64,000 bases of DNA, taken from IMG/VR virus record IMGVR_UViG_3300031884_000002, positions 1 through 64,000 of that record. One strand, 5' to 3'. The first letter of the stretch is position 1. The number at the start of each line of letters is the position of its first letter. Made by a program: the position numbers and the translations under genes. The notes under the pieces are model-generated. The model ran no database searches, was not told where the DNA came from, and saw nothing but the letters and a program-made list of their open reading frames with translations. This document shows positions 20,350 to 46,589 of the stretch, piece by piece.

Positions 20350-20934
20350 TTAGTTTTTGGCAACCAAGTAGAATTTGCGACGGGGACGTTCATTTTTGGC
20401 TTTGCGGTTTTTATCTTCAACGTTAGAAAGGATGATAGTGGCAACTTTCTTGCTACCCTTTTCACCCTGATTCATTTTGACCGATAGATATTGATAGATA
20501 GTCGCATCAGGATAACGGTCAAAGCCAAATTCTTTACGAATATCGGCAATAATATCCGACACAAAAACAGACTGGACTAATGCGATTGAACGCAATTTGC
20601 CTAATTCGGCACCAAGGGCATTAATTGCGCCACGTTTTTCCATAAGCTTTTCAATCAGTTGCGCCACGCCATTAACCCCGTTTTTAACGTAATGTGCTCG
20701 AAACGCCAACGGGGTTTTTACGCTGGCGAGAATTGCGTTAATTTCACGCAATTGATTTTTCAGGGAAACGGAGGCATTGTAACGGACGATATTGTTTTGG
20801 CTTTTCAAGGATTTTTTCAGGTTAATCATATGTTTTTTAGTTTTGCGGTTATACTGGTTTAGTTGCTTTCGATATTTAAAGATTATCAGTTTGCCGGTTA
20901 ATTTCAATAAAAATCGTATTTTATTTTGAAGCAC
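20350..20934 (-). CDS. Hypothetical basic protein, possible winged-helix C-domain
   Basis: ORF track; C-terminal RPRRKFY. Confidence 0.6.
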   Translation of the reverse strand: MLQNKIRFLLKLTGKLIIFKYRKQLNQYNRKTKKHMINLKKSLKSQNNIVRYNASVSLKNQLREINAILASVKTPLAFRAHYVKNGVNGVAQLIEKLMEKRGAINALGAELGKLRSIALVQSVFVSDIIADIRKEFGFDRYPDATIYQYLSVKMNQGEKGSKKVATIILSNVEDKNRKAKNERPRRKFYLVAKN

Positions 20935-23456
20935 TTATACTGGTATAAGTGGTATGCGGTGAAAACTGTCTCGATTTGAGACAGTGTGGTATAATTGCTT
21001 AGGCTTGCGGTGAGTTCATTAGCATATTTAATATGCTATTAATCACAACTTTATCAGAGTTTGCCGCACGATAAGCCATTGGTGCAAATCCGTTAGGTGA
21101 ATTGGAATGTGCCTTGCTCCACAATTCAATCCTATCATTGGTACTATGTTCCTTCATGATTTTTAATGCTTCATCAATATCTTTTATTCCATTGGTGCCA
21201 CGCCAAAGAACCATATAAGAACGGTTTGATAAGGTTGCTTCAATGAATAGATTATTGTTGTTTTGCATATGTAAGAGAATATAGATTTAAATCTATTTGT
21301 CAACCGTAAATCACTTCTTTAAAGATTGCCAGTTGAATGAATGCGTCAAAATCCATTGCATCACAATTACAGAGCCAATTGTCCCAAGTATCAAAGTTGT
21401 TTAGATTGGTGCTAGGTGGCTGAGTACAGCCTTTAGGCCACTTATCCGTAAAAATCAAAGGGAACGTTGCAATAAGCATATCCTTGCCAACGGCATGTTT
21501 TATTCCAGTGTCTTGGTTGATAAATCCAAATAACCAGTTTTTATAATTCCAGTCAATACATTCCAACGATGAACCTTGGCTGGCTTCTGGAAAGTTTGCC
21601 ATTATGCCTTTGACTACGGATTCAACTGTTTTGTCGTTAATTTCAATGGTAATTTTCATATGTTATAGAAATTGGTTTTTATTGTGCGGTAAACTCCATC
21701 ATTGTGCCATTGCGGATTTGACGGGCATTGCGGGCCTTGTTAAAGGTCTGACACCGTTCCCGGGCTTGTTCATAAGTCAAGCCGGTATCCACCGTGGTTT
21801 TCCGGCCATTGACAAAGGTTGTCCAATTGGTGCAACTACGTTTGAATGTCTTGTAAAATGTCATAGTCGTAATATATAGATTTAAATCTATTTGTCAAAT
21901 GTTAAGAGTGCGCCACGCATCAAAAACCGCCCAACTATGAAATTGCTTCTTACGTTCCTCAATTGAGGTTCCGGCACACTCCCACAAATCCAATCCACCG
22001 CATTCGGCAACTGTTTCGTCATAGAATGCTTCGATTAAATCTTTATGGATAGGGTCATTTTCAAAATCAATGTCTGGCTTATCGCCACCTGTCCAAGCTC
22101 TACGTTGATAGGTATGTCCTAATTTGGTTGTTATGGTGTATGGAGATGTCATATGTAAGTAAAAGAATATAGATTTAAATCTATTTGTCAATGGATTTTT
22201 GATAGTTATGCATTTATACTGGTATAAATGGATATAGCATAATTGCCGCAGTCCAGTTACGAACCACGGCAACTAACACATATGAACCGCACCAAAATTA
22301 AGATACCAATTTGTCTTGAATGTTAAACAAATCCAGTGCCAATCGAGTACATTCGTCCATTGATACTTTTATTGGAAGATAAACAGGTGATTGAATAAAT
22401 CTTAGCATATTCGTTCCTGATGTTACTCCAGCCCAACGAGAAAGCATTCGAGCTTCTTTTACAGTCAATTCCAAAATAACTTTTTCAATTTGAGGTGGTG
22501 GAGGCGGCTGCGGCACAGATTTAATAGTTGTTACTTTCATATTCAGTATATTATAGATTGTTTATTGTTTGTCAATTCAATTCCAGCAAGGTTTAAACTT
22601 TTCTTTGCGGCTGTAATTCTTTTTGCTTTCGACCCGCTTGGTTACGGGGTTTAATACTCCCCAAGTTTTACGGATGCGAATGTCGGCTTGTTTGATTGTT
22701 GTTTTCATATGTTGATAACAATATATAGATTTAAATCTATTTGTCAACCTTCAATGTTCTGACATTCCGTTATATCAAAGGTTTTGGTAAAATCCTTGCC
22801 ATTGGTCAAAATCAAATCCAATTGGCTTGAATAGTATCCATTGTTATATCCATGTCCAGCAACCCGCACAGGATGCCCATGAATAGGTAGCAATTCAATT
22901 CCATAACCATCGACCCGCTTGAAAAAAGCATCAGTTGACAAATCAAACTCCAATCCGTCAAAATCTGCCAGACTCAAATCATGAAAATACAATCTCAAAT
23001 CATGAAAATACAATTCATGAAACTCACAACAATCTTGACTGTGATAGGATAATAATTCAAGTCCATTGTCAAAGATAATTCCATAGTTATTCACCACGAC
23101 AACCTTGGATTTATTTAAATTAGATATTTGTTCCATATGTGAATACAGTATATAGATTACTGAGTAAAAGTCAATAGAAAATAAAACTATTTTTGCCGCA
23201 AGTAATTATACTGGTATAATTGCTATTTTAAGCGAAGTCCATTCCTCATCTATAATATAGATTTCAATTTAAAAGTCAATCACAATTGATATTCTTTTTT
23301 CAAATATTTAGCAAGGTGTTTTACCGTTTTCAAAAAGCAACGTGCCTCATATTTAGTCAGTGTATGAGTTTTCTTTCGCTTGCGATTGCGGAAACATCGG
23401 ACAGAAAATGTATCATTCATAAGTAAAATTATACAGAATTAAATCTATTAGTCAAA

Positions 23457-23490
23457 TAAAAAAGTTGCCTAGTTTTTAGGCTAGGCAACT
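23457..23490 (-). terminator. Intrinsic terminator
   Basis: AGTTGCCTAG-loop-CTAGGCAACT with an A-run on the left (U-tract on the minus strand). Confidence 0.75.
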
Positions 23491-23506
23491 CGTAACACAT
23501 ACACTA

Positions 23507-24040: not shown

Positions 24041-26233
24041 ATTTTTTATTTTTTGGTGTTATGTGTTACTGACAAAAGAGATAATATAGATTTTTAGATT
24101 AAAGTCAAATGTTTTCAATCAAAATTAACAGAATCTTCAAAAATATTATTCAACCGGATGCGAATAGTATCTAACTTTGCCGCAATATTAGGATACTCAA
24201 TAACATCTTCAGCCGTTAATTCGCCAGTGATAATCAGAACATTTTCAATGGCTTCTTTGATAGATTGCTCGTTAAAGTTCATAGTTGTAGAATATAGATT
24301 TTTAGATTAAAATCAAATTAAATCCAGCCATTTTCTGATAGTTGCATAGTAATCATATTCCAAACCACGAGCCAAACAGACACCCTGAAAAAATCCAACA
24401 GTGGAGGAAATCACATGTATTTTACTGGTGGGCGAGTCTGCCAATGATATACATGCGGTCTTAACATTACTATCAATATGTTTAACCAATTCTTCTAAAG
24501 TGCAAGTTTTATAATTCATATGTTCCTAAAAGAATATAGATTTAAATCTATTTGTCAACCGGAATCGTAAAAATCATTAACACCACTTAGACCAATATAA
24601 ATGGAGTTTTATGCGGTGAAAATAGGTTGCATTTATACTGGTATAATAAGGTGTTTAAAAGGTTGGCATATGAGAATAGACAAAGACTCATATGCCAATT
24701 TGAAATGCAATTTATGAAAACAATAACTAAACAGACGATAGCACCAAAATTAGACGGTGACAACTTCAGCCAGCAATTCAACATCGGGTTTATTATTCTT
24801 GCTGGCATTCTTAACACGGCGAATATAACCATTCATCTTCAAATCATGCCGCTTGTTAATCTCATTCAATGTCTCAATATGGTTAATGATGAAATTGGCA
24901 GCTTGAAGCGGAGAAACAGAAGTTGCCATATTAACATTCAGCTTGGAGGTTACGAAATTGCGAACTTCAATCAGACGTTCGTGAGAAAGTGCGTCCAATT
25001 CATTCGTAAAGGTTTTTCCATCGGTGGTTTCGTATGCGATAACTTTTTTCATTTTATTTTTTGGTTTATTGTTGTTATGTGTTACTGACAAGAAAGAGAA
25101 TATAGATTTTTATTTAAATGTCAATCAGATTTCAGTGTAGGCCACAGAAATATCAATTGGTGGTTTGGAAAAAATCCAACCATCGGAATTAGTAGTATTG
25201 TGAGTAGAACTATATTTCTTCTTGGCTTTCTTCTCAGCCGCATTGTGACTGCCAGCTTTGATATAACCGGTTTCAACTCCATTAACATAGACGATGTAAG
25301 TTTTCATATGGTTAAGAATATAGATTTTTATTTAAATGTCAATCTTTTCCTTCAATTCTATCTTCACTCCAATCATCATAATCAGGTTCATCCATTTTAA
25401 CCGTATCGGCCCATTTATCAACATTGGCTTCAATGGCAGCTTCAACCGATTTAATTTCATCCGGTGAAAATCCAGTTTTATTCCAATCCCATTCTTCAAT
25501 GTAAAAATAAGTAGTGCCACGGTCAACGCCCTTGCATCCCCAGTACTCATATGCTCCGATTCCATCGTTTTCCCAGTCCCCTTTGGTGGTGACTTCAATT
25601 TCAACTTCATCTTCGCCACGAGTTGGAAGTTCAACGGATAGTGTAAATGTGTTAATCATAGGATTAGAATATAGATTTAAATCTATTTGTCAAATGAAAT
25701 CAGCAATTTCAATTGCCTTTTCAATATATTCTCCCTTAAGTTCTGCCAATTTACAATCATAATCAAATCTTAGTTGAATCAATGAGTTTCGGATTTTAAC
25801 TCCAGTATCATATGGCAAAATTGCCTTTGGCTTGAACCAGCCCATATAAGATGGAGAATAAACCAATCCTTCATCATTTAGTTTAGTTATTTCAGCACCC
25901 AAGATATAGGGGAACTGGTCATATTTCCAAAAAGCCATTAGTCGTGTATTCATAAATGTAAGAATATAGATTTATATCTATTTGTCAACAGGTTTTTGAT
26001 AATTATGCATTTATACTGGTATAAGTGGTTGATTACCAATTATATAGGTAGAATTAGAATGCGGTGAAACTACTCAGTGAATACTTGAACTAAATTACGC
26101 CACGTCGAAATTGTCTGTTTAAGAAGAAAATCCTTAATTGCTTTCTTTTGCTTACGAGAACATTTAGCATTCATAAGTTTTTTATTATTCTTCACATAGT
26201 ATAAATATAATCTATAAAATGTCAAGTTAAAAA

Positions 26234-26340: not shown

Positions 26341-26349
26341 ATTAAAATT

Positions 26350-26602: not shown

Positions 26603-27390
26603 TATATACTACCGATTCTAATCTATTTGTCAACTGTTTTTACGAAACATCCACTTAACCCGAACCATGTTTGTTTGCTGGCAGAAATAAGTTTTAATCT
26701 TCATTTTGTTTATTGGTTGTTTGTTGTTACTGACATAAACAAGCATACAGATTAAAATCTATTCGTCAATCATTATATTCCAACAGGAATTGAATGAGAG
26801 AAGTCCAATCAGGCAAGGGACCATCACCAAAGGAGTTATTAAACTCAGGCGTGTCTGATACAGTAACCCATTGATTCTTATCAGAGTTCCACTGCAATTT
26901 CAACTGATGTTTAACCCAAGAGTCTGGATTTCCAACCTCAATGGCAAATGTATTGTCTTCAAAACGTTCAATGTTAATATTATTCATAGGCGATAAGTAT
27001 ATCAGGAATAGATTAAATGTCAAGGGAATTTTAAAGATATAATTTACTCTAATAGTTGTAGTAGAAGCACTTATACTGGTATAGATAGTATAACAAAAGA
27101 ATGCCGCACTTTTAATGCGGCAATCTATTCGTAGCTCTTAATTCCCCACCTTGCCAAGATTATCTAAACCGCCAACCAAATCCAAAATGAAACAGTTAAA
27201 ACATCTAAAGCAATGGACCAACCGTAAATGTTACTTACTAACTTTTGTTTTTCTGCTTGACTTTTGGACTTCATCATATTAAATAGACAAATCCAACCAA
27301 AACTTGATAGAATCGTCCAAATTACGGCTAAAATTATTAGAAATTTAATCATATGAGTATATTATAGATTTTTATTTATTTATTTATCAA

Positions 27391-27660
27391 TTACTTTGTT
27401 TCGTAAATATTGTATGTTCCTTGAAATACTCCCCACGATGATTGTTCTTTCATAGTATAAGACTCAGGAACTTCATTGGTTCGCATTTGACGGGTCAAAT
27501 ACCACAAATGGCTTTCCTCCCATGTGACACATATCAACTTTTGATTGGGTGGCAGTTTCAATTCAGCATTTCCGCCAAATTGTTTGGCTCTTTGATTTTG
27601 AGTGCAACCAGTTAAAGCCAAGGTTGGAATTAGTAACAGGATTGGTAGTATTCGTTTCAT
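27391..27660 (-). CDS. Small lipoprotein
   Basis: MKRILPILLLIPTLALTGC: signal peptide with lipobox. Confidence 0.7.
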   Translation of the reverse strand: MKRILPILLLIPTLALTGCTQNQRAKQFGGNAELKLPPNQKLICVTWEESHLWYLTRQMRTNEVPESYTMKEQSSWGVFQGTYNIYETK

Positions 27661-28080
27661 AGTGTTAAAAGTATATAGATTGTTATTTATTTGTCAAGAT
27701 CCAAACGGTTCTACATTCCAATCATCATCTGCTACTTTGATTATAGTAGTTTTACTAATTGTTGAATCAGGAATACAAATCGCAACTTTGCGAGACCAAT
27801 TACGAAATATACGAAAATAATATTTTACACCATCAATGGTTACTGGATCTATTCTGCAAACTACGGAATAAGATACAGAAAAAGGTCTTTTATCATATTT
27901 AAGATGCGCTTGAATATAATCTGTTACTGCCCCACCGCACGAACCAATTGAACAATATGTATATGGAATTTTCATATTTGTATTTTATAGATTTTAGAAT
28001 AAATGTCAACAAAAAATAATTTATGTTTTTTGGTAGAGCACTTATATGTATATAAGAACACTCTACCAGAAAGGTAAAAT

Positions 28081-28827
28081 ATGGCAAGCAAAATAATGAC
28101 AATAGATAAAAATGAATTACAACTAATAATAGACAACAGTAAAACTTACGGTGACGTATTACGTCATTTTGGGTTGGAAAATAAAGGAGGAAATCACAAT
28201 ACTCTAAAACGAAGGATAAAAAATGATAATTTATCAACTGATAATATTATTAAATTTAAATCAGGAGGAGGATGGAATAAAGGATTACATGGATTTGATA
28301 TTAAAGCATTATCTAAAGAAGAAGTATTAAATATAGTGTTTATTAAAAATTATACTGGTGGAATACGACCAAGAACATATATTAGGAGATATAATCTAAT
28401 AGAAGAAAAATGTAATGAATGTGGATTAACTAATATCTGGAATAATAAACTAATTACATTAGAATTAGATCATATAGATGGCGACTCACATAATAATTTA
28501 TTAACTAATTTACGATGGGTATGTCCTAACTGCCATAGTCAAACTGATACATTCAGAGGTCGAAATAGAAAAATAGAACATTTTTGTGAATGTGGAAAAT
28601 TAAGATGTAAATCATCCAATAAATGTGTAGATTGTAATCATAAAGAACAATTAAATAAAAATCATAAAATTATTTGGCCAAGTGATACTGAACTTATGGA
28701 AATGATGAAGACTACTTCATTATATAAATTAAGTAAAACTCTTGGTGTTACTTCCAATTCTATTAGAAAACATTGTTATAAACGTAATATAAATTGGAGG
28801 AAAGATGGTGCAATGGGAGGGATTTGA
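28081..28827 (+). CDS. HNH homing endonuclease; 3' end overlaps tRNA-Lys antisense
   Basis: CNECG...LELDHIDGDSHNNLLTNLRWVCPNCHSQT. Confidence 0.9.
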   Translation: MASKIMTIDKNELQLIIDNSKTYGDVLRHFGLENKGGNHNTLKRRIKNDNLSTDNIIKFKSGGGWNKGLHGFDIKALSKEEVLNIVFIKNYTGGIRPRTYIRRYNLIEEKCNECGLTNIWNNKLITLELDHIDGDSHNNLLTNLRWVCPNCHSQTDTFRGRNRKIEHFCECGKLRCKSSNKCVDCNHKEQLNKNHKIIWPSDTELMEMMKTTSLYKLSKTLGVTSNSIRKHCYKRNINWRKDGAMGGI

Positions 28828-31000: not shown

Positions 31001-31349
31001 ATGTTTTATTTTTGTTTAATTGTTTCGTTTACTGCTACCAACATTTAAGATATTACAGATTTATTTTTAAAAGTCAAACTAAAACAGATTTATTTTTAAT
31101 GTTCCGGTTTGGTTTGTAATACCGTTTACTTCCAAAAGAATATAGATTTATTCTAAAGAGTAAAGATAAATCTATTCTATTTTTTGCCAGCAGTTCCCAT
31201 GCCAACCGGCACAGCAGTACGCACTTATATTGGTATAAGTGGTTGATTACCAATTATATAGGTAGAATTAGGATGCGGTGAAAACAATAAAAAACGCCTT
31301 GCATTCGGTGAAGAACACAAGGCATTAACACATGAACCCAACACCAAAA

Positions 31350-31664: not shown

Positions 31665-34600
31665 AATTTTTTATTTTCTATTCGTTACGTTTAAGAGTAT
31701 ATCAGATTAAATCTATTTGTCAATCACTTCCGTTACAATTGGAAACTTCATATCAATAATATCAAACCCCATTTGTTTAAAATAATCCATAACACCGTTA
31801 GGGTCGGTTTGCCAATCACGTTTAAGTTTTTCAATGCTTTTCTTTGGCATTTGGAGAATAATCGAAGTTTTTGGTGTTTTCATATTTAAAATTATATAGA
31901 TTTTAGGTTAAATGTCAAATTTAAATTGAAGTCCTCTTTCCTGCTGGATTTGTTTAGCCGAATTAAAATCATCACTACCATAGGTAAATGAACTTAATGG
32001 ATGTTCGTAATATTTACAGCCACAATAAGCACATTGTCCTTTTGGTTCTCCCATATCATCACAGATAGCAGGGTCTTCAAGGTATTTTCCACAAGTGGTT
32101 AAAATGATTGGTTCACGCATATAGGTATAGAATATAGATTGTTATTTAAATGTCAATAGAATTTTTGGGAGTTGACAAATAGATTTATATCTATATACTG
32201 CTTTAACTATGAACGACAAAATACCACATATTCCTAAACTTGCAAGTATTATCTACTGGAAGGATACCGCCGAAAAGGAGCGAGTCGAGCGGTGGATTAA
32301 GAAGTTAATGGAACAGGGACATATCGAAGCCCATACTACAAGGGAATACAATTCTTATTGCGGTGAACCAGTATGGTTTATACCGTGATTATTCCATTGA
32401 CATTTATATTTTAATCTATATACTTTATCAACTATGAAAATTTACATTTATCATCGTTTCAAAAATTGGTGTCCTCCCCGAACATTTGGAGTGGAATGTT
32501 ATGGTCCATTTAATTCGGTGAAAGGTGCTACTTTGGCACTGGAATATCAAAAACGTGTAAATGCCAATACGGGAGAATATCTTAGTTCGGTGAAAATCAT
32601 TCGTAGAAAAAATGAACCAGAGTTTAGAACTTTGGAATGGCCGGATGTCTGTAAGTCAGACCGACGGTTTATGGAAGATAAAAAAGATTGGCATTTGATT
32701 TGACATTTAAATAATAATCTATATTCTATAAACATATGAATGATTTAACTGCTAGAGAACATGCCTATGCCATCACAATGGCTGTTAATACACTGGTTTC
32801 CGCCATGGGAATGGTAGCCGAAAACAAACAACGAGAAATTGAAGGTAAATCTATGGCATATACCGAACAACAATTTAATGACTTAATTCTTAAGAATGGA
32901 TGTCACCATAATGGTGTTTTAGGATTAAATTGGAATAATTATTGACTTATAAAAAATAATCTGTATGCTTTAAATATTATGAATCTCAAACAATATACTG
33001 TCGGTGAAGTTACATATGGTTATTCTCTTAAATCCAAGAAATGGGAGTTTAAGATTAAGGATTTTACTTTTCTTTCTCCTTGTCCCGGTGGAAATGAAAT
33101 GGGTGAAAAGTTTGCCAAAATTGTTGCGGCAGGTTACGTTCGCACTAAAGGAAATGGAATTGGTGGTCTGGCACGGTCAAACATTGACAGACTGCTTGCG
33201 GTGAAATAATACTATGAATAAAAAAATTGTTGAAAAAGCACTTGAAGCATGGGATGAATATAATTCATTTGTTAATTTTAAACCTACCAATGAAAACTTT
33301 GATATAATTAAAGCGGCATTTATCAAAGGTTATATTTGGAAATGTGCCCAACTTGAAATCGAAAAATTTCCAATGTGAAATAATTATAGATTGACACTTT
33401 CTCGTAAACCTGTTATTATGTTGCCATTATGAATAATCAATGGCAATTTAAGAATGGGCTGAATACAACGGAGTTTCAAACTTTTCCGTTGGCTTTCAGG
33501 GCAATGTTTAATTTAGTCCGCAAAGGCGTCGAAGATAAGAAGCCGGTGGATACGTCAAAGTTTTCAATTGTTGGACCTAAAAATCCAAGAGGTGAAAACG
33601 TGCGTTATAACTATAATCAGGCAATGGAGTTTGCCGGTTCATTTGGTTTGGTAAACCAAGATGGATATTTGAATGGTAAAGAGTTTAAACGTAAAAACAG
33701 TTGACAAATAAAATATAATCGGTATAGTTATTTGTGTTGGGAGAGTACCTCAGTGGTGATTTGTGAAAATGTTAATCTTAATACCTTGACTTTTGGCGAA
33801 GACTATACTATAATTCAATATCCTTAATAACATATGCATATTCACAAACAAAATATTTTAAATCTAAAAGATGGAGAAGTTTATTTTTTAGATTTAGGCG
33901 AAGAGTCAGGTGCTGAGGTTTGGAAGAAAAATGACCTTTACTTTTTATTTGACATTCCTCAATATGGAGGCACTCCAACGTATTGTGGACATTTCAATGT
34001 ATTAAATATTGACGACGCAATTAAAAATGTGTTATCTTGGACTTAATTATTATGAATAAACAAGAACGACTATTGCGAATTAAAGCATTTGCTGAAAAGC
34101 AAGAAATAGAAACTACCATTCTATTTTCTGAACTTCCATTCTCCAAGCAGGAAATTGAAGAAACGGTTAATGATATGGAGGCATATACCGAACATAAAAG
34201 AAATGAAAAAGAAGCATTGACTTCGGATGAATAATCCGTATAATTAAAATATGAATACTACACGAGCAATCTATATTGGAAACCGATTTAGCCGAAATAA
34301 TTTTACGGGTGATTATAACAAAGATACTTGGCAATTCTTTCCCGATGGAATGCCAAACTTTGATTTTTTCACTGGGCCTAATTTTGTTTATCTTCCTCAT
34401 GATTGTAATGAGTGGGATGATTCTGATGAAGCCGATAAATCAATTGCAGGTTATATTACTTTACCGATATGATGTTTCTATTCCCGTTCGGGAATACTTT
34501 ATACAATTATACTAATATAATTAGTAATGTTACCGCTCGGGTATTTATACTAGTATAAATGGTATATCAGGCCAACTTTTATTTTTAATTTATAGTTAGC

Positions 34601-35713: not shown

Positions 35714-36358
35714 TTGGAAATTGGTTGCTATTTAGATTATCATCTGTATAATACTCATATGATTAAATTACAGGAACAATTCAAATCGGGTGCCGGTGGA
35801 TTTTCGGGACCAGAAATCCTAACGTATAATCAGGTTATTCGTTCGGATACGGCTGCGGTGTATGAACGGTCTAGAGATGGTAAAGTAAAGGATTTTGAAG
35901 TATTTAAGATTAAGTTTTATCCAAAGGGAATGATACAAAAGTTTCCTAATGGTACTACAACCACAATCGAGGATGATACCGAACGCTATCCATCCAATGG
36001 TGACTTTGGAAAAATTGCTTGGTGTTGTGGAAAAACGGAGGCAATGCGTCGTTTCAATGAAATTAGTAATTCAGCGGTGAAATTGGATGATGAAGATGAT
36101 GAAATTAAAATCATTGAAATTGATGAAACTGTGCCAGTCGTATCAACTGGACGCAGGGGACGTGCTCCTAAACAACGTCACGATTTAGTTATTCCCGATG
36201 GAGAGTTTACCACTAATGATTTAACTGAATTGAATCAGGTTGACCGTAATGATGCTGTATTCTATATTAACCAAGAATTAGGCAAGAAAATCCAATTCAT
36301 TGGAGAAAAACGTATCGGTGAAAATAAACGACCCAGTAAGATTTATAAGAAGATTTAA
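35714..36358 (+). CDS. Hypothetical protein with a putative C-terminal DNA-binding (wHTH-like) domain
   Basis: RRGRAPK...PDGEFTTNDL...RPSKIY; similar to 38011-38553. Confidence 0.6.
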   Translation: MEIGCYLDYHLYNTHMIKLQEQFKSGAGGFSGPEILTYNQVIRSDTAAVYERSRDGKVKDFEVFKIKFYPKGMIQKFPNGTTTTIEDDTERYPSNGDFGKIAWCCGKTEAMRRFNEISNSAVKLDDEDDEIKIIEIDETVPVVSTGRRGRAPKQRHDLVIPDGEFTTNDLTELNQVDRNDAVFYINQELGKKIQFIGEKRIGENKRPSKIYKKI

Positions 36359-36442: not shown

Positions 36443-37092
36443 TTTCTATTGACAAACATCTAAAAATCTATATTCTATAAACATATGGGATTACGAATAA
36501 ATCTATTTAAAATGTTAGGACTTCCGCCAACTGTTGGAGAATATTTAGATGGTTCATTTGCAGTTATGGTTGATGAACTTGATATTTGGAATTAGAAATA
36601 AATTGACATTTCCCTTTAAGTAGTTTATATTTATTGTTATATGGCAAAAAAACCCGACGACAAGAATAACGAAAACTTGGATATGTTCAAGGATTTTCTA
36701 AAAAAGAAACAGGGTAATACTGATAAACCCAAAATTGTTCCAACACATCCTATGGATGAATTAGCCAAAGAAGGAGAGAAGCTATTGGCGGATGAAAATG
36801 CTGTAATTGAGCCGCCAGGAATTCAAGAAGCTACCAAGCCAGCACCCAAGATTGATAAGAATCCTTATTCACGAGCCAAATCATATGTTCTATCCAAAAT
36901 GGATGAATGGAATAGAAATAAGTTTCTTAAAATCTGTCGTGATATGGAAAAGGGATTGACGGTTGATAATTTTGCCGACCAACGGCTTCATGATGATACA
37001 TCTTGGAAAATTACTATTCTTGGTAATGATTTAGCCGATGGAATTCCATTGCCTAAAAAGTAAAATAGATTAGAATTAAACTTTACACAACA

Positions 37093-37120
37093 CCGAACTG
37101 ATTTAGTTCGGTTTTTTGTT
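37093..37120 (+). terminator. Intrinsic terminator
   Basis: CCGAACT-GATTT-AGTTCGG followed by TTTTTTGTT. Confidence 0.8.
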
Positions 37121-38010
37121 TTATAGCATTTATACTGGTATAATAAAACATCCATTTATACCAGTATAGTTAGTTTAATTAAGTAAAAAATACATTTGAC
37201 ATATAGATTTAAATCGGTATTCTATTGGCATATGAAAAAACACATTAAATGTATAGTATCAGTTACAAACTCAAACGGTGAACCTGATTTGTTTTTTATT
37301 ATTGTCAATGCAACAGAGGAACAAATTGAAAATGGGGAACATTACGATACTGCAAAAGATGAAGCTTGTGATTATGGATACGAGCCTTATTTGGTGTATG
37401 ATGAAAATGATTCGGCTGGCAAATCTATGCTTTCATTATTTCAATGGGAAACTGCCTCGGTGATTGAATGTAATTGACAAATAAAATACAATCTATATAC
37501 TCTTAAATATGAAAAACAAAATACCATGTTGTAAAATTACCAATCCAGTTTTGAAAAAAACATTGGCAACTCTAACTAAAGAAAATGGCTATCCCATTGA
37601 TGAACGATATTGGGATTATGACAGTAACAGTGCTATTTTTTTCGTGCCAAACGATGAAGTAAATCGGGGTGCTGGATTTGCTTTTACTAACTTGACAAGC
37701 TATAATAATTCAAGCGGTGATACTGCCTTTAAAACGGTTTCTATTGAAGAAATGTTTGATATTATGTCTAAACCTTATGAGGCTCCATTTCAGCCTATTG
37801 AGGTGAAATTGAATGATGAATATACCGCTAAAGTTCAACGGGATGGTTCGGTGAAAGTTGGATGCCAAACTTTTCCTATGCAATCGATTGTTAGTCTTTA
37901 TACCGCAGTCCAATTGGTAGTATCTAAAAATAATATTTGACAAATAGATTTTAATCTGTAAACTTTACATATCGTTAAAAACAAAACAACAAAAAACAAA
38001 AAATTAAATT

Positions 38011-38553
38011 ATGAAAAATAAAAACAACAAAAATAAAAAATCAACCGCAACTGTTAAACCCGCTGGTCCTGGTCGTCCTGCCAAGGCCATTAAATGGCCC
38101 GCTACCAAGCAATTCACTATGGATGACATGGTGAAGGTCAATGAAGGTATTTGTTCCAAGCTGTGTATTATTCAGCATTTGCAACGGGATGCCAAGCTTG
38201 GCAAGAAGTCCATGATTGTCAAGACGGATGAGAAGCGGGATAATTCTAGTGGGCGGGGACGCAAGCTCGAAGTGTATATGAAGCGGGCAAAGGTTGATGG
38301 GGATGTCAGCATTACCAAAGTTAGCCGAACGGTGAAAGTGGTTGATATTGCTCCGGTTACGACTACGGAACAATACGAGGCAATGAAGGCAGAATTGGCT
38401 GCTCCGTCTGCTCCGGTTGCGGTTGCCGATATTCCGGCTGTTGAAACGGTTGCGACTCCTGAAGTTGTGGCTGAAGTGACTCCTGAACCGGCTCCGGTGG
38501 CTGAAGTTGTGGAAACTCCGGTTGTGGCTGAAACTGTTACGGTCACGGCATAA
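38011..38553 (+). CDS. Hypothetical protein: basic wHTH-like N-domain plus Ala/Val/Pro/Glu-rich tail
   Basis: GPGRPAK...PATKQFTMDD...RGRKLEVY. Confidence 0.7.
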   Translation: MKNKNNKNKKSTATVKPAGPGRPAKAIKWPATKQFTMDDMVKVNEGICSKLCIIQHLQRDAKLGKKSMIVKTDEKRDNSSGRGRKLEVYMKRAKVDGDVSITKVSRTVKVVDIAPVTTTEQYEAMKAELAAPSAPVAVADIPAVETVATPEVVAEVTPEPAPVAEVVETPVVAETVTVTA

Positions 38554-40233: not shown

Positions 40234-41136
40234 CTAATTAAACAATATCCAATTATGTGTCATTATGCGTTCGCCTCTGGTTATGCGGCGGACCATATTG
40301 GCATTTAATTTGTATTTATTTATAAAATCAAATTGTATTCCTTCATATATTTCATTCGTAATAATATTTTTAAACTTAAATATTGTTTTTAACTTCAATG
40401 AATTAGATATTTGTGATTTTTTAATAAAATTAATATTTCGACGAGTTTCTCCTTTATATTTCCATTCTTTAACTAATGATTTAAACTTATTTACGTTTAT
40501 ATTATATGATATGGCTAATTGTAAAGCAGATGAATATCCAAGTTTCTCATATAAACTTTGTAATTCTCTTTGTTTATAATTTTCTATGTGAATATAACAT
40601 GGATTAGATTTTCCTCTTACTCTATTCGTATGATTTAATCTAAATTGTTTATCATTCCATAATAATTTCATATTATCTCTACACAATAGTCTCATATTTT
40701 CAGTGTTATACCCACCCGTAACATCAAACTTTAAATTATACACTTTATATTTATTTAATTTAGCAATATCTAAATAATATTGTTCTATTTTATTAAGCGT
40801 CTTTCTGTTCGATTTGGCATATTCCAGTTCTACAAATATAAATGCTTCTTTTCCATATTTATTCCATGCACTCTGTAAATATTTATTTGTGTGTTTATTA
40901 GTTATTAAATGTCGTTTGTGATTATTTCTAATTCTATGCCAAAAGTTTTTAGTACTTCCAACATACCATTTTCCATTGATTTTATTTACTATTAGGTAAA
41001 TCCCGCTTTTCTTTGACATCGTAGTATCTGTCAAGTTTCCGTTTACGTTCGGTAATTTTGTGCCGGTCATAATAGCGTTTATAACGTTCTCTATTTTTTG
41101 CTCTCGTTCGCTCAAGACGTTGTTTAAGTTCTTCAT
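40234..41136 (-). CDS. GIY-YIG homing endonuclease; true start probably at MSKKSGIY
   Basis: SGIYLIVNKINGKWYVGS...HTNKYLQSAWNKYG...LNKIEQYYLD. Confidence 0.9.
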   Translation of the reverse strand: MKNLNNVLSEREQKIENVINAIMTGTKLPNVNGNLTDTTMSKKSGIYLIVNKINGKWYVGSTKNFWHRIRNNHKRHLITNKHTNKYLQSAWNKYGKEAFIFVELEYAKSNRKTLNKIEQYYLDIAKLNKYKVYNLKFDVTGGYNTENMRLLCRDNMKLLWNDKQFRLNHTNRVRGKSNPCYIHIENYKQRELQSLYEKLGYSSALQLAISYNINVNKFKSLVKEWKYKGETRRNINFIKKSQISNSLKLKTIFKFKNIITNEIYEGIQFDFINKYKLNANMVRRITRGERIMTHNWILFN

Positions 41137-41590: not shown

Positions 41591-41859
41591 TTTGGTTTCC
41601 TTTGTTAAACCGGCAAAGGATTGTCCGAATCACAGAAAATGTTTCATTGGAGGTTTATCGCCAATGATGAATTGAAGAATAAAACAGATATGAAATGAAC
41701 TTCTTCATTGGATGTGGTTAAAAACTGATTTGTTTATGCCCTAATTGTCGGGACTACATAAACAAATCAAACTTTAATATCCCATAATATAGAAATATGT
41801 TATGGGATCTTTCATTTATAAGGGATATGCCGGTATATAGGGTAGTTATACCAGTATAA

Positions 41860-42372
41860 TTACTTATTGTAATCTTTAATTTGAAGAGTGGCAACAGTAG
41901 GAAATAATGAAGGATTAAAGAACATCATTAGTTTATGGTTGCCGCTGGCTTTATCCGTGGTAAACTTCATCTCCCATTTATCACCTCGTTGATTAACTGG
42001 GTTAGCATCGGCAAGTAACTCATTGGCTTTAGTTTTGATTGCGGCAGTATTATAAATAGACAATAATCCTTGAGGATTGACTATAACATATAATTGGGCC
42101 TTTGAAATCATATCTCTACCCATAATATTGGCTTCCCAATCTTTAACCGCTTCAAATATTATGTCGGCACCACCTTCTCTAAACTTTAATTGAAAAGATA
42201 ATCTACCTCCCGTTTTAGGACAAAAGAATCCATCTATTTTATCAAACTTATCTTGTTGACTGGTAGGAAGGTCTATTTTATAACCATTATGATTTAAGTA
42301 ATCTATAATATATGCTTCTTGTTCTTTTCCTAAAGCAATTCTACTAGTATAATCAGTGACAGTGTTTAACAT
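41860..42372 (-). CDS. Hypothetical protein, possible PD-(D/E)xK nuclease fold
   Basis: E...DKIDG...QLK pattern (weak). Confidence 0.5.
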   Translation of the reverse strand: MLNTVTDYTSRIALGKEQEAYIIDYLNHNGYKIDLPTSQQDKFDKIDGFFCPKTGGRLSFQLKFREGGADIIFEAVKDWEANIMGRDMISKAQLYVIVNPQGLLSIYNTAAIKTKANELLADANPVNQRGDKWEMKFTTDKASGNHKLMMFFNPSLFPTVATLQIKDYNK

Positions 42373-42428
42373 AATATATAAATATTATATCATATAAAGA
42401 ATAATTAGTCAATGAAAATAAAATGAGT

Positions 42429-42502
42429 TGGTCCCCCATGAAGGAATCGAACCTTCATCAAAGCCTTATAAAGACTCCGCTAGACCTTCCAGCTAATGGG
42501 GG
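42429..42502 (-). tRNA. trnI: tRNA-Ile(UAU)
   Basis: GAGTC-TT TAT AA-GGCTT; CCCCCAT/ATGGGGG acceptor; A73; CCA. Confidence 0.85.
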
Positions 42503-43626
42503 AACCGACTAACTACTAAATAACTATATCACACTATTCTAAATTGTCAAAATGTTTTTTAATTGCCGCATGAGTATAAATCAATTTAGCAACTTCAAAG
42601 GTGTTATTACAATTGGCTCCGACAGATTCAAAATGCTTATAATACGGAACATCTACTATTCCAATTAGTTTATCCAATGTATCGGTAATAGGAGTATAAT
42701 TAAACAATGAACCAAAAACATCCAATTCTCGTTGAGTTTCAAAGGTGAATGAAACGGTAACAGGTTTAAACTCAGTTGATTTATCAGTTGTGATTTTCAT
42801 ATTATGGTTAAAGTATATAGATGTTTAGATGAATGTCAAGCAATAGTTTTTTGAGGAATATATTTCTCTTCAATGATTTCATATGCCGCATCAGGATTTT
42901 GATTTCGAGTATATCCAAATACTTCAACGGGACAAGCACGGTTATTACAGAACATAGTCAAACCATAGCCTTCTTTGTTATGATTAAATACATTTCCAAG
43001 GCTGATAGACAATGGAACATTACACATGGGACAAGAATAAGATTTTTCAGTCATAATTTTATAGACCATCTGCCGCTTTAATTTCAGTTTTATCTAAAAA
43101 AAGTTCTTCATCAGTTTGTTTTAACCCACCGCAAGAAGTGCAATATTTACCATTGCCAAATGCAGGTTTATTATTAAGTTGGTGCCAGCAATACGATTGC
43201 CCTAAATCATCGTCATCACTGTATATATATGTTTTAGTCATATATACAATATATAGATTAAATATTATTTGTCAACTTCCAACCGGCAATTTGTTTATGA
43301 GAAATGCCATATAATCCATCTCGCTGAACGTATAACATATCATCAACTTTGTTAATAATATACTCGACATCCATAAAATCTTCATCATATTCTGCCGCAG
43401 ATAAAATGTCAAAATAATGTTCTTTGGTTTCTTCTAAAGACCAGTTACTTTTAATGGCTTTAGCCACAATTACACTGGTTAAATCTGAATGTTGACTCAT
43501 ATAATAATTTAAAATAAACAGCAGTCACATGTTACAGCATGGATTAGTTTTAAGGTTCCCGTACTGTAAATACTCGAACCACATTCACGATCTCGATTTA
43601 CGAGGTATCCCGTTTTACTGTTAAAA

Positions 43627-43907
43627 TGGTAGCGATAACCGGACTTGAACCGGTACAACTTTTCAGGGTTCTTGGATTTTCATACTACTATGGTTTTCAC
43701 CACCTACTTAGTTTGTAGTCTGGACTTTACCTTCATCCGGTCTGGATGCACTCCGTCAAGTCTCTACACCTTCCTATTTCTAGGCTTGGCTCGGTATTAC
43801 CATTTTACAGGCTTCACCGACTTTGAAGTGTTCTACTTTTTGGATTCCTCCAAAAGCACTCAATTTTTCTCTAAGTCCAATGCGTCTGCCAATTTCGCCA
43901 TATCGCC
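43627..43907 (-). tRNA. trnL: tRNA-Leu(UAA) interrupted by a group I intron
   Basis: Exon 1 ...GACGCATTGGACTT; exon 2 AAAATCCAA...GGTTCAAGTCC...ACCA; spliced loop CT TAA AA. Confidence 0.92.
43681..43872 (-). other. Group I intron (192 nt, no ORF), tRNA-Leu(UAA) type
   Basis: Q AATACCGAGCC, R GTGTAGAGACTTGACGG, S AAGGTAAAGTCC; 5' splice after U; terminal G. Confidence 0.9.
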
Positions 43908-44390
43908 ATTACCGACTAAAATAGATTATACCGATTATTTATCAGAAGTCAACAACTTCCAAAGCGATATGACACAAATCCATACTCCGATTTATGAAAT
44001 CCTAATTCTTCTAATCGTTCAACCTCATCGGCTAATACTTTACTTGTATCACAAGTTACAAAAAAATTATCATGTTCACAATGAGTTGGAGCATAATCAT
44101 TGTTATATTTAGATAGAATCGTAAGTGCTTCGATTAAGTCTTTCATATTAAAGAATATATAGATTATTATTCCGAAATCAAGGTTAATTGACTGGCATCA
44201 CAATCCCACACATTATCATCTTGGTCCTTAACTTGAATATATCCACCTTGTTTATATCCAATAACAACACCTTGAAACTCATTGAGAAAATCACCATCCA
44301 ATGGTTCAGCAATTACTTCAGTTCCAATTTTAAATGTTTTCATATTAAAGAGTATATAGATTATAGATTGGAAGTCAATACATAACCAAC

Positions 44391-45071
44391 TCAGACAGCA
44401 TCTTTAACATATCCTTTATACTTATAAATGCCAGATGCACGAGTTTTATTAAATCTCTTATAACCGGTATTCCCATTGTTAACTTGGATACCTTCAATAT
44501 ACTTGTCGGATTCCTTTACAATCTTAACCACACGAAATTGATGGTCTCCATTATGGGGATAATCAAACTCAGCAATTTCATCCATTTTAATGAATCTGCC
44601 GCTGGCATCCCGTTTCAATTTAGTATGAGAATCATTAGCATACTTATCATTTTGAATAGTATCCAAAACATCATTAACATTAGAATAAATCTTATTCTTA
44701 ATTTTGACACCACCCTTGGGAATAGGTAAATTATTTAGTGCGTCAATTACAACATCTTTAATTTTTCTATTCTTGGTATATTGAGCCGATGCTTTGACAA
44801 TAGGCTTAGACACCTTTGGATTGGAAATAGGATAATCAAATGTCTTTTTCAAATCTGAAGCATTAGGAGTAACCCAGTTCATAATTTGACCCGTTACAAT
44901 ATCAACTTCCAAATCAATATAATCACCAGAATGTTGAAAGTTTTTATTAGGTAGCCAGTTCGGCACATAGCCATTATAGATTTTACCTAATTGATTGCCA
45001 TTTTCATCATACAAATCCAAATACAAAAGGTCGGAACATTTGGAAGAGATTAGAATCGTTTTATTTCTCAT
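44391..45071 (-). CDS. Hypothetical protein with RDASGRF motif and possible WYL-like C-domain
   Basis: ORF track; FDY...RVV...EG...YKRF pattern (weak). Confidence 0.55.
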   Translation of the reverse strand: MRNKTILISSKCSDLLYLDLYDENGNQLGKIYNGYVPNWLPNKNFQHSGDYIDLEVDIVTGQIMNWVTPNASDLKKTFDYPISNPKVSKPIVKASAQYTKNRKIKDVVIDALNNLPIPKGGVKIKNKIYSNVNDVLDTIQNDKYANDSHTKLKRDASGRFIKMDEIAEFDYPHNGDHQFRVVKIVKESDKYIEGIQVNNGNTGYKRFNKTRASGIYKYKGYVKDAV

Positions 45072-46589
45072 ATTATTTTAGTTGTTTTTTGTGTTATTTA
45101 AGTGTTAAAAGTATATCAGATAATAGATTTTAGTCAATGACTAATTCTATTCAATTCATCTCTAATTCCATTAACAATATTATCAATATTGATTTTAGTA
45201 TCAAGCAATGAAACATCCTTATGTTTATAATTAAAAACAGATTGATTTATATACTTTTGAGCCTGATAATAAGTAGCGTGTCCCAATACACCAATTATAA
45301 CAAGGATTTCATCCTCATTCAATTCAAGTTTAAAAATCCGAGGAGGTTTAGGCTGCGGCACAATTTCCGATGTAATTTTCATAGTTAAAACAGTATATAG
45401 GTTAAATTTAAAATGTCAATGATTATTTTTCTTTGGGTAAATTGTGCCAGCAATCCATAATATGTTCAATTTCAGTAAATGTCAATGCCAGACAATCATC
45501 ATTATTCAAATTTAATTCCGGCTCACTGCCATCCCATGCTATTACATAGCCAATCGGAGTCAAGCCAGATGAAAAGATTAAAACATCTTTATTCCATTTA
45601 CATTGTATATTCATAATAATTTAATTTGCCAATGTAACTTGTCCGCTATAAATTGCCCAATGAGATTCTTTAAAGGGAACTGGACCTACCTCACTTACCT
45701 CACTTCCAATGGTTACATATCTGCCAGCATTATTCGCTTCAGCGGGAATATGGATAATCGTTCCATTGTTTTCATCTCTAGCCAAGACAATTATTCCTTT
45801 CCAAGATCCGGCACCACCTCCAATTGCACCCAGATGAATAAGTAAGCATGGATAATTTCGAGTTTGTGTATCGTTAGTAATAGTAGCAGTAGATTTCATA
45901 GATAAATACATTATACCGATTTCATTTCCTGAGTCAAGTGAATATTCCAATAGTCCGAATTACTCAATATCGCATAATAAAATCCCTTGGCGGCATCCAA
46001 AGAGTCAAATTCTTGAAAGTTATTTTCCCAGCATCCACAGTCCCCATCATCAAATCGATTAGGATGATTATAAACCCTATAAATTACAAAGTATTTCATA
46101 ACTTCTATACTATAGATTTATTTTATAAAGTCAATATCTTTATTTAATTTAACCACATTAAATGGTTCGGTTCTGGTAATATACAATCTATTTTGAAACG
46201 AATATTCAATTTTAACTTTTTGTGGCGTAAATCCAACAATTTTAGCCTTAATAATTCCTTTATATGTGGGAGGATTAAAAGCAATTGAATCTCCTTCATT
46301 CAATTGCATTCCTGAAATATCATTCATATAAATCTATTCTACCGATAATCTGACGATTAGCAAGGAAAATCTTACGATAATCTGACGATACCACTTATAC
46401 CAGTATAAATGGGTAAATTAGCATTTATACCTATATAATAAGAGAGGACCACTTATACCAGTATAATAAGCAATCTTTAATAAAGAACCCTATATATAGA
46501 TAGATATATAAATCATGCGGTGAAAAAATCTATATTTTTAGTGATTTTATAGTATATGTATAATTAGTATAAAATAATAAACTAAATAT

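What the first reader, a model, noticed from the sequence alone, without database searches (positions are those of the whole stretch)
20931..46470. Polar 22-bp palindrome family whose orientation flips at a head-to-head pair at 37.13-37.17 kb
Seen: arms CAYTTATAC/GTATAARTG flank an asymmetric dinucleotide. It is TG at 20931, 22210, 23206, 24629, 26007, 27067, 31221 and 37126, and CA at 37152, 41846, 46391 and 46449. It is TA at the convergent junction 34541. Essentially all copies are intergenic, often beside terminators. Known: serine recombinases exchange at a central 2-bp core that sets directionality; parS/matS-type sites are dispersed palindromes. Inference: a dispersed protein-binding or recombination system organising the early region (segregation, injection control, insulation or rearrangement).
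Basis: partly seen in the sequence, partly recalled or inferred. Interest (0 to 1): 0.75.

Follow-up and report, generated by a model that had tools for sequence, protein, structure and literature searches.

The report
Conserved dyad sites between phage early genes
A lake-water jumbo phage carries about 18 copies of a 14-bp inverted repeat (TTATAC-NN-GTATAA) in the gaps between its early transcription units; they are most likely binding sites for a dimeric DNA-binding protein, not oriented recombination sites.

Summary
TTATAC-YR-GTATAA occurs 18 times (at most 1 mismatch) in the window against 0.6 expected. In the whole 353,772-bp phage genome, exact copies lie only at 20.9-46.5 kb.

- **Setting.** This is the early region: about 70 tiny ORFan genes, each with its own TTGACA-N16-TATAYT promoter and an ATG 6-11 nt behind it. 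The sites lie between units, usually after a terminator and 13-90 nt before the next -35 box.
- **Relative R (72-86% identical).** It has the same family. At 13 orthologous sites the half-sites are 95% identical and the flanks 71%. The central dinucleotide is 73% identical, no better than the flanks.
- **Centre.** It is TG/CA or TA in 41 of 44 sites. It changes or inverts between orthologues.
- **Relative G001.** This more distant relative has its own family, CTCTAA-NN-TTAGAG, in the homologous region. The centre there is GG or CC against flanks of fixed orientation.
- **Absent genes.** No serine or tyrosine recombinase and no ParB was found.
- **Hairpins.** They are weak and show no compensatory changes.

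Best reading: operator-like dyad sites inside PeSL-like terminator/promoter cassettes. The binder is unknown. The left-right "polarity" is a weak, non-conserved trend. A separate 7-mer, CGGTGAA, is strongly polar.

The parts
19276..19295 (.). Degenerate copy (core TTATACCACTATAA)
20932..20951 (.). Perfect 20-bp copy, centre TG on +. It follows the terminator hairpin of gene 20999-21268 (-) and the CGGTGAA motif.
   Evidence: orthologue in relative R at L294:11122
22211..22230 (.). Perfect copy, centre TG on +. The core ends 22 nt before the -35 box of the minus-strand promoter at 22164-22191.
23203..23222 (.). Copy with centre TG on +, 31 nt before the -35 box of the promoter at 23147-23174 (-)
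   Evidence: orthologue L294:8545
24584..24603 (.). It pairs with 24630, 46 bp away. Its orthologue in R is inverted.
24630..24649 (.). Copy with centre TG on +, just after a 12-bp-stem terminator-like hairpin
   Evidence: orthologue L294:7106
26008..26027 (.). Copy with centre TG on +, 22 nt before the -35 box of the promoter at 25961-25988 (-). The orthologue in R has the centre plus neighbour changed (CTAA).
27068..27087 (.). Copy with centre TG on +, 9 nt after the tail of the terminator at 27102-27122 (-). The orthologue in R has centre AA.
31222..31241 (.). Copy with the arm variant TTATAT, centre TG on +, downstream of the terminator at 31293-31326 (-)
34504..34523 (.). Degenerate copy at the convergent junction (core TTATACTAATATAA), just after a plus-strand terminator-like hairpin
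34542..34561 (.). Copy with centre TA at the convergent junction. The orthologue in R has an asymmetric centre (TG on window +).
37127..37146 (.). Copy with centre TG on +, 9 nt after the tail of the terminator at 37092-37112 (+). This is the distal member of the head-to-head pair and is absent in R.
37153..37172 (.). Copy with centre CA on +, 26 nt before the -35 box of the promoter at 37196-37223 (+). It is conserved in R (L293:3510).
41843..41862 (.). Copy with centre CA on +. It overlaps the stop codon of gene 41860-42372 (-) and lies 29 nt after the terminator at 41779-41808 (+). Its 20-mer is identical in R.
42336..42355 (.). Weak copy (TTCTACTAGTATAA) inside the 5' part of gene 41860-42372. 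It may be chance or coding-constrained.
46392..46411 (.). First of a three-site array (30 and 28 bp apart), centre CA on +. It lies in the divergent region between gene 46118-46327 (-) and the HNH gene 46590-47360 (+).
46422..46441 (.). Middle, degenerate member of the array (core TTATACCTATATAA)
46450..46469 (.). Third member of the array, centre CA on +. Its 20-mer is identical in R (L298:6485).
22164..22191 (-). Example of the repeated early promoter cassette TTGACA-N16-TATTCT, followed by an ATG 11 nt later. Its spacer is itself a palindrome, ATAGATTTAAATCTAT. About 70 such promoters lie at 20-50 kb.
35759..36358 (+). Candidate binder, untested. This early protein has an AT-hook-like GRRGRAPK stretch and a C-terminal winged-helix-like domain. 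It is conserved in R, G001 and S.
38011..38553 (+). Candidate binder, untested. This early protein has a GRP motif and a predicted helix-helix-beta-hairpin module. It matches the NrtR winged-helix family only below threshold.

Best explanation
**What it is.** The element is a 14-bp dyad-symmetric duplex-DNA site, TTATAC-YR-GTATAA. It is part of the regulatory spacers that separate the many small early transcription units of an uncultured freshwater T4-related jumbo myovirus.

**What it most likely does.** It is most likely the operator of a homodimeric sequence-specific DNA-binding protein.
- Each monomer reads one TTATAC half-site.
- The central pyrimidine-purine step (TG, which is CA on the other strand, or TA) is needed only for its deformability. 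It can therefore point either way.
- Sites stand alone or in arrays 26-30 bp apart, which suggests cooperative binding.

**Inferred function.** The typical order is terminator, then dyad site, then promoter. From this I infer that the bound protein controls or insulates early units. It could block read-through between units, or shut early promoters down together.

**How the 'polar' pattern arises.** Neighbouring cassettes are copies of one another. Direction itself does not appear to be selected.

**Shown and inferred.** Shown here: the existence of the sites, their clustering, the selective conservation of the half-sites, and the freedom of the centre. Inferred only: that a protein binds, which protein it is, and the regulatory outcome.
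For: 1. **Enrichment and clustering.** 18 copies against 0.6 expected, all within 19-47 kb of 354 kb.
2. **Purifying selection on the half-sites only.** At 13 orthologous sites in relative R the arms are 148/156 identical, the flanks 1112/1560 (Fisher p = 8e-13) and the centre 19/26 (p = 1 against flanks).
3. **The centre.** It is a YR step in 41 of 44 distinct sites in either orientation.
4. **No compensatory changes.** None occur in the core, and the outer arms pair poorly.
5. **Weak RNA hairpins.** They fold at 0 to -7.5 kcal/mol and several copies do not fold at all.
6. **Arrays.** Spacings are 26, 28 and 30 bp in the window and 27 bp in the relatives.
7. **Position.** Sites lie between terminators and sigma-70-type promoters.
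8. **Parallel family in G001.** Relative G001 (major capsid protein 73% identical) has about 19 copies of a different dyad with the same arm and 2-bp-centre geometry. They lie in the region homologous to this early region.
9. **Candidate binders.** Two early proteins conserved in the window phage, R and G001 have winged-helix-like modules.
Against: - No binding protein is identified. The 53 early proteins have no Pfam DNA-binding domain at E <= 0.01.
- Both structure models are of low to moderate confidence, and the fold matches have weak E-values.
- A third relative, S, has homologues of both candidate proteins but no such palindromes in 15 kb of homologous DNA.
- The distance to the -35 box varies from 13 to 90 nt, so a fixed activator or repressor geometry is excluded.
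- Three sites (34504, 34542, 41843) have no promoter nearby.
- No RNA data could be obtained. The protein-DNA complex job was not folded.
- Copies are related by descent, so the p-values overstate independence.
Confidence: 0.5

Rival explanations
1. The palindrome is the stem-loop part of a classical PeSL cassette. It would work as a hairpin in RNA or single-stranded DNA, as a terminator or mRNA-end stabiliser, and as a short homology that lets cassettes recombine and shuffle genes.
For: - The phage is T4-related.
- The palindromes lie just upstream of repeated near-consensus sigma-70 promoters in a region of ORFan genes.
- Stem-loop consensus sequences of PeSLs are lineage-specific (PMC4122927), as they are here and in G001.
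- Strain X20 lacks one exact promoter-plus-gene module (25694-25993) and has 24094-25211 replaced by 72 nt.
- Gene content differs between the window phage and R next to several sites.
Against: - Predicted hairpins are weak or absent in the sense strand.
- A 2-nt centre cannot form a loop without opening the stem.
- No U-tract follows the palindrome, and separate G+C-richer terminators already precede many copies.
- No compensatory substitutions occur, and the outer arms do not pair.
- The indel junctions seen lie at promoters, not in the palindromes.
Confidence: 0.15
2. The palindromes are selfish REP-like or MITE-like repeats. They would spread through safe intergenic spots and have no function for the phage.
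For: - The sites are extragenic, often paired, and vary in copy number between relatives.
- They are present in the window phage, R and the P0003 lineage but absent in S.
- The genome encodes one Y1 (HUH) TnpA transposase and six TnpB proteins.
Against: - Orthologous copies keep their arms at 95% identity while the flanks drift to 71%. That is not expected for neutral relics.
- The IS605-type elements have unrelated G+C-rich end hairpins. They insert at TTCAC about 190 nt from a palindrome, not at one.
- No palindrome lies anywhere near tnpA at 110.9 kb.
Confidence: 0.1
3. Each arm is a promoter element for a phage-modified RNA polymerase (a 'middle' promoter). This would give a subset of early genes a second, later transcript. 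Alternatively, the TG strand acts as an extended -10 promoter that makes antisense RNA.
For: - The arm CATTTATA resembles the box TTATATTTATA. That box precedes 59 non-early genes by 3-6 nt and is nearly absent from 20-47 kb.
- On the TG strand the site reads TGGTATAAK, close to the extended -10 consensus TGnTATAAT. Two copies have TTGATA 17 nt upstream.
Against: - Nothing in a promoter role explains the dyad symmetry.
- The -7 position is usually G or A rather than T.
- The TG is replaced by TA, AA or CA at orthologous sites.
- No ORF follows the site in either direction.
Confidence: 0.08
4. One reading: crossover sites of a site-specific (serine) recombinase whose 2-bp core sets direction, or parS-like centromere sites.
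For: - The geometry of inverted arms around a 2-bp asymmetric centre resembles hix/gix sites.
- The TG/CA split is 8:1 against 0:4 around 37.14 kb.
- One contig end in run X18 continues from 23219 into the flank of the inverted site 41843. This may be only a 20-nt local match.
Against: - The complete genome has no resolvase, no tyrosine recombinase and no ParB.
- The core is variable and not conserved.
- In G001 the centre flips independently of the flanks.
- The head-to-head pair is not conserved.
Confidence: 0.04

Closest known systems
PeSL (promoter-early stem-loop) cassettes of T4-type phages (Arbiol et al. 2010, PMC2839356; Comeau et al. 2014, PMC4122927)
   Same: - Short composite regulatory cassettes repeated between small ORFan genes in a hyperplastic early region of a T4-related phage.
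- A near-consensus sigma-70 promoter with an inverted repeat just upstream.
- The repeat consensus is lineage-specific.
- Cassettes mark places of gene gain and loss between close relatives.
   Different: - Here the inverted repeat is an A+T-rich perfect dyad with a 2-bp centre, no U-tract and little hairpin energy.
- Separate terminators are present.
- Its sequence, rather than its pairing, is conserved.
- There is no Shine-Dalgarno part, because the genes look leaderless.
- Only about 1 in 5 of the promoters carries the dyad.
Dispersed operators of a phage repressor, for example the many C1 operators scattered over the P1 genome, or lambdoid operator arrays (from my own knowledge)
   Same: - Many copies of one short site spread over tens of kilobases next to promoters.
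- Some stand in closely spaced pairs or triplets.
- Half-site sequence is conserved and the centre is tolerant.
   Different: - No repressor is known here.
- The sites lie upstream of the -35 box at variable distance, or at gene ends, rather than over the promoter.
- The phage shows no integrase, so a lysogeny-type repressor is not expected.
REP/BIME extragenic palindromes of bacteria and their RAYT transposases (from my own knowledge)
   Same: Short extragenic palindromes at the ends of transcription units, often in pairs of either orientation. In bacteria they are bound by proteins such as gyrase and IHF.
   Different: - No RAYT-like gene is flanked by the sites.
- The only Y1 transposase belongs to an IS605-type element with different hairpins.
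- The sites are confined to 28 kb of the genome.
hix/gix crossover sites of serine invertases (from my own knowledge)
   Same: Inverted half-sites around a 2-bp asymmetric centre.
   Different: There is no invertase gene. The centre is variable and not conserved. There are many sites rather than one pair.

Membership tests
PeSL cassette | Host genome is a T4-type myovirus | tested here: met
   The major head protein (274479-276206) matches PHROG 138. By tblastn it matches 2,573 phage records, dominated by T4-like phages of Escherichia, Synechococcus, Klebsiella and others. A tail sheath is also present.
PeSL cassette | Strong sigma-70-like early promoter repeated between small non-essential ORFs | tested here: met
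   About 70 TTGACA-N16/17-TATAYT matches at 20-50 kb, oriented with the genes. There are 9 or more near-identical 26-nt copies. These are consensus matches only; activity was not tested.
PeSL cassette | Stem-loop just upstream of the promoter that acts as a transcription terminator | tested here: inconclusive
   The dyad lies 13-90 nt upstream of the -35 box. Its hairpin is weak (0 to -7.5 kcal/mol), lacks a U-tract and shows no covariation. Separate terminators precede it.
PeSL cassette | Shine-Dalgarno sequence and start codon at the 3' end of the cassette | tested here: not met
   The ATG lies 6-11 nt after the -10 hexamer in most units, which leaves no room for a Shine-Dalgarno sequence.
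PeSL cassette | Association with indels between close relatives | tested here: met
   - Strain X20 lacks 25694-25993, cut just upstream of two -35 boxes, and has 24094-25211 replaced by 72 nt.
- The window phage and R differ by whole modules, by an HNH gene and by TnpB insertions.
Serine-invertase crossover site (hix/gix type) | A serine recombinase encoded by the element | tested here: not met
   PF00239 has no match in the complete 353,772-bp genome, while the controls gave matches in 12 of 14 genomes.
Serine-invertase crossover site (hix/gix type) | Identical, conserved 2-bp core in partner sites | tested here: not met
   The centres are TG, CA, TA, AA and others. Orthologous conservation is 19/26, the same as the flanks.
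Serine-invertase crossover site (hix/gix type) | Both orientations of a bounded segment present in the population | tested here: inconclusive
   Only short-read contigs were available. One ambiguous contig end links 23219 to the flank of 41843, and the 'opposite strand' joints have short sides.
parS/ParB centromere | A ParB-family protein encoded with the sites | tested here: not met
   PF02195 has no match in the genome.
REP/REPIN with RAYT | A Y1 transposase gene flanked by the repeats | tested here: not met
   The only PF01797 gene is at 110898-111263. No palindrome copy lies outside 19-47 kb.
IS200/IS605 end hairpins | The repeat equals the sub-terminal hairpin of the IS | tested here: not met
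   The ends of the IS in relative R carry G+C-rich hairpins of the CCCTTTAGGG type, and the IS inserts at TTCAC.
Operator of a dimeric DNA-binding protein | Specific binding by a protein dimer | not testable with these tools
   The complex prediction was not run for protein plus DNA. The candidate winged-helix proteins are only leads.

The most novel reading that the evidence does not exclude
A clade of freshwater T4-related jumbo phages may organise its early region with lineage-specific dyad sites: TTATAC-NN-GTATAA here and CTCTAA-NN-TTAGAG in G001. These would co-evolve with a phage-encoded winged-helix protein. They would act as boundary or roadblock elements between dozens of leaderless one-gene transcription units. 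They work alongside a separate, strongly polar 7-mer (CGGTGAA). Together this would be an undescribed architecture for phage early-gene control.
Probability: 0.2. Interest if true: 0.65.

Novelty: new variant of a known kind. Interest (0 to 1): 0.5.

Why it matters
Early regions of large phages are full of tiny genes of unknown function, and little is known about how their expression is organised or switched off.

A site family that is under selection is found here, with a parallel family of different sequence in a relative. This gives a concrete handle. It predicts a cognate DNA-binding protein that can be found by pull-down, and a way to test how dozens of small units are insulated or shut down together.

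The work also corrects a tempting misreading. TG and CA at the dyad are the same base-pair step seen from opposite strands. An apparent 'polarity' of a palindrome can therefore arise by descent alone.

Tried and rejected
1. **Near-identical or clustered copies elsewhere.** An 18-mer scan of IMG/VR gave 25 singletons. The phage collection had no DNA match. Four MCP relatives have no clustered copies of the motif (only three isolated one-mismatch matches, in G004 and G005, no more than the reversed control pattern) and none has this promoter.
2. **RNA evidence.** No RNA run was listed.
3. **Rearrangements.** The single read-laying run gave contigs that break at the repeated promoters. Most joints are repeat artefacts. 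It gave two real module-level variants, but none with a junction in a palindrome.
4. **Host LexA box.** The Bacteroidetes SOS motifs are GGA-N5-TCC and CTAA-N5-TTAG, so there is no match.
5. **IS605/TnpA link.** Rejected.
6. **Binder identification.**
   - Pfam and PHROG scans of 53 early proteins found no DNA-binding family.
   - The ESM Atlas search was uninformative.
   - Phyletic profiling failed, because phage S has both candidate proteins but no palindromes in 15 kb.
7. **Other relatives.** G004 and G005 have no comparable upstream dyad family. G005 has only a palindromic promoter spacer.
8. **Isolated half-sites.** They are not enriched, so the element is not a pair of abutted transposon ends.

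Full report
**What the window is.** The window is the first 64 kb of a 353,772-bp virus record with 30.5% G+C, rated complete. It comes from lake-water metagenomes and is present in many runs. It encodes a T4-type major head protein and a tail sheath. The nearest cultured relatives by capsid are Microcystis phage Mel-JY01 and Flavobacterium phage immuto, at about 52% identity. Uncultured relatives reach 73-83% capsid identity. The host is unknown.

**Check of the observation.** The pattern is real and far beyond chance.
- There are 9 matches to the 20-mer at up to 2 mismatches against 0.02 expected.
- There are 18 matches to the 14-bp core at up to 1 mismatch against 0.61 expected.
- All ten exact cores in the whole genome lie at 20.9-46.5 kb. 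Looser matches elsewhere are isolated.
The copy at 24584 points the other way inside the 'TG' block.
- Only the 14-bp core is a true palindrome. In 44 distinct copies from this phage and its relatives, pairs 4-8 are nearly always complementary, while pairs 1-3 are complementary in only 15-32 copies.

**Surroundings.** The stretch from 20 to 50 kb is an early region of unusual regularity.
- About 70 genes of 35-340 codons each follow their own TTGACA-N16/17-TATAYT promoter. The ATG comes only 6-11 nt after the -10 hexamer, so the mRNAs would be leaderless or nearly so.
- Many promoters share a 26-nt sequence whose spacer is itself a palindrome, ATAGATTTAAATCTAT.
- Fifty-three of the proteins have no informative family.
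- The rest of the genome uses a different box, TTATATTTATA, 3-6 nt before the ATG. That box is almost absent from 20-47 kb.
- The dyad sites occupy the longer spacers between units. Eleven of 17 follow a terminator-like hairpin and 13 of 17 precede a promoter. The distance from the core to the -35 box is 13-90 nt.
- Three sites lie at gene ends with no promoter nearby. These are 34504 and 34542 at a convergent junction, and 41843.

**Relatives.**
- A scan of metagenome contigs found two contigs of a related phage, R, with several copies each.
- Look-ups by exact protein recovered about 30 kb of R's early region. It is 72-86% identical to the window and syntenic with 20.9-50.8 kb.
- At 13 orthologous sites the twelve half-site bases are 148/156 identical and the +-60-nt flanks 1112/1560 (Fisher p = 8e-13). 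The central dinucleotide is 19/26, the same as the flanks.
- Centres change between orthologues: TG to AA at 27068, TG to TA at 26008, and TA to TG at 34542. The centre is inverted at 24584.
- A closer lineage (P0003) has the same family. A further one, S, has none in 15 kb of homologous DNA.

**The centre.** In 44 distinct sites the centre is TG or CA in 32, TA in 9 and something else in 3. TG and CA are one and the same base-pair step read from opposite strands, and TA is the other flexible pyrimidine-purine step. What is preferred is therefore a YR step at the dyad (41/44 against 25% expected), not a direction. The copies are related by descent, so this p-value is inflated.

**Polarity.**
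- In window coordinates, TG dominates to the left of 37.14 kb (8:1) and CA to the right (4:0). Fisher p = 0.007 before allowing for the choice of break point.
- Gene strand does not explain this. Minus-strand genes at 20-31 kb see CCAG, while minus-strand genes at 41.8-46.3 kb see CTGG.
- Relative to the nearest downstream promoter, the orientation is 12:8 over both phages.
- Of R's seven extra sites, four fit the left-right rule and three do not.
- Neighbouring cassettes share long flanks, for example 22211 with 26008 and 26008 with 31222. Local duplication is therefore the simplest source of the trend.

**A parallel family in a distant relative.**
- G001 (369 kb, capsid 73% identical) lacks this dyad and this promoter.
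- It has about 19 copies of AA[C/A]TCTAA-NN-TTAGA[G/A]TT clustered at 304.9-320.3 kb, including a four-site array.
- That region is homologous to the window's early region. It holds the homologues of DUF932 and of genes 35463, 35714, 37232 and 38011.
- The centre there is GG in some copies and CC in others, while the oriented flanks (att on one side, gatcg on the other) stay the same. The centre therefore flips independently of the cassette.
- Same geometry with a different sequence is what a diverging protein-operator pair would give.
- G004 and G005 show no such family.

**Hairpin, promoter and mobile-element rivals.**
- RNA hairpins are weak. The sense strand folds at 0 to -6 kcal/mol and two of five copies do not fold. 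The other strand folds at up to -7.5 kcal/mol in four of the five copies tested and hardly at all (-0.4) in the fifth. No U-tract follows and no compensatory change was seen.
- On the TG strand the site resembles an extended -10 element. One arm resembles the non-early box. Neither explains the dyad or survives the centre changes.
- The genome carries six TnpB genes and one Y1 TnpA. In R strains a 1,277-bp TnpB element sits about 190 nt from the orthologue of 41843. Its hairpins are G+C-rich and unrelated, and it inserts at TTCAC.
- There is no resolvase, no tyrosine recombinase and no ParB.

**Plasticity.**
- Strain X20 lacks exactly one promoter-plus-gene module (25694-25993) and has 24094-25211 replaced by 72 nt. 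This replacement removes sites 24584 and 24630.
- The HNH gene 46590-47360 next to the triple array is absent in R.
- This matches the PeSL picture of T4-type hyperplastic regions (PMC2839356, PMC4122927). The junctions seen here lie at promoters rather than in the dyads.

**Who binds.** This is not solved. Two early proteins conserved in the window phage, R and G001 are leads only.
- Both carry GRP-type AT-hook-like stretches next to a predicted helix-helix-beta-hairpin module.
- For gene 35759-36358 the module has pLDDT 70-83. It matches winged-helix domains of ROK, MarR, PadR and NadQ regulators over 52-64 residues, with probability 0.9-0.99 but E-values of 0.2-1.
- For gene 38011-38553 the model is poor, and the only family match is below threshold (NrtR winged helix, E = 0.03).
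- Their putative recognition helices are identical between the window phage and R and differ in G001. That could simply reflect overall divergence.
- Phage S has both proteins but no dyads.

**Verdict.** The sites are real and selected. They are best read as operator-like dyad sites in PeSL-like cassettes, a new variant of a known kind. The direction of the centre is not a functional signal.

Noticed in passing
window 19220-49804. Sites: 19220, 20957, 24614, 25462, 26062, 31276, 31306, 32361, 32516, 32588, 33002, 33199, 36075, 36316, 37276, 37849, 38330, 46518, 49798: A strongly polar 7-mer, CGGTGAA (often ATGCGGTGAAAA).
- It occurs 19 times on the + strand and once on the - strand at 19-50 kb, against about 0.9 expected. 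GCGGTGA is 15:0.
- In the other 320 kb it is 9:9.
- Its orientation ignores gene strand. It is intergenic among minus-strand genes, and it lies inside plus-strand genes in two reading frames.
- The same orientation bias holds in the relatives: R 8:1, 13:2 and 16:1; the P0003 lineage 11:0 and 12:0; S 8:1 and 9:1. The loci of each lineage overlap, so these counts are not independent.
- It may be a Chi-like or translocase-orienting signal. This motif, not the palindrome centre, is the polar element of the early region.
   Followed up: partly
window 20000-50000, for example 21276-21303, 22164-22191, 37196-37223: About 70 early genes each have their own TTGACA-N16-TATAYT promoter with the ATG only 6-11 nt after the -10 hexamer. 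This implies leaderless or near-leaderless mRNAs throughout the early region.
   Followed up: partly
whole genome, for example window 13003, 18448, 63212: Non-early genes use a different box, TTATATTTATA, followed after 3-6 nt by the ATG (59 clear cases). A T-run or terminator often lies about 15-20 nt upstream. The box is the reverse complement of the T4 late box TATAAATA as read along the gene, and it is nearly absent from 20-47 kb.
   Followed up: partly
window 21281, 21876, 22169, 22725, 24536, 25671, 25966, 32179, 35391: The spacer of the repeated early promoter is itself a 16-bp palindrome, ATAGATTTAAATCTAT (9 exact arm matches). Relative G005 has a different palindrome, TTTTTATAAAAA, in the same position of its early promoters. 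It could be a second operator, lying over the promoter.
   Followed up: partly
window 7353-8513 and 16150-17301; genome 91-92 kb, 108660-109799, 110898-111263, 117814-118926, 332942-334270: The phage carries six TnpB (Cas12f1-like_TNB) genes and one Y1 TnpA. In strains of relative R, TnpB-only elements of 1,277 bp are present or absent at TTCAC in the early region.
   Followed up: partly
window 15248-15637, plus tRNAs at 486, 1121, 4082, 28806, 36366, 41516, 42429: ARAGORN calls a phage-encoded tmRNA with a 25-residue tag peptide, and seven tRNA genes.
   Followed up: no
window 46590-47360, 28081-28827, 40234-41136: Three free-standing homing-endonuclease genes (HNH, HNH, GIY-YIG) lie inside the early region.
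- The HNH gene at 46590-47360 is absent in relative R.
- In R only a C-terminal remnant of the HNH gene at 28081-28827 is left, and 27164-28600 is missing.
   Followed up: partly
window 24094-25211 and 25694-25993: In run X20 a strain of this phage has the first stretch replaced by 72 nt. It lacks the second, which is exactly one promoter-plus-gene module, with TGAGG at the joint.
   Followed up: partly
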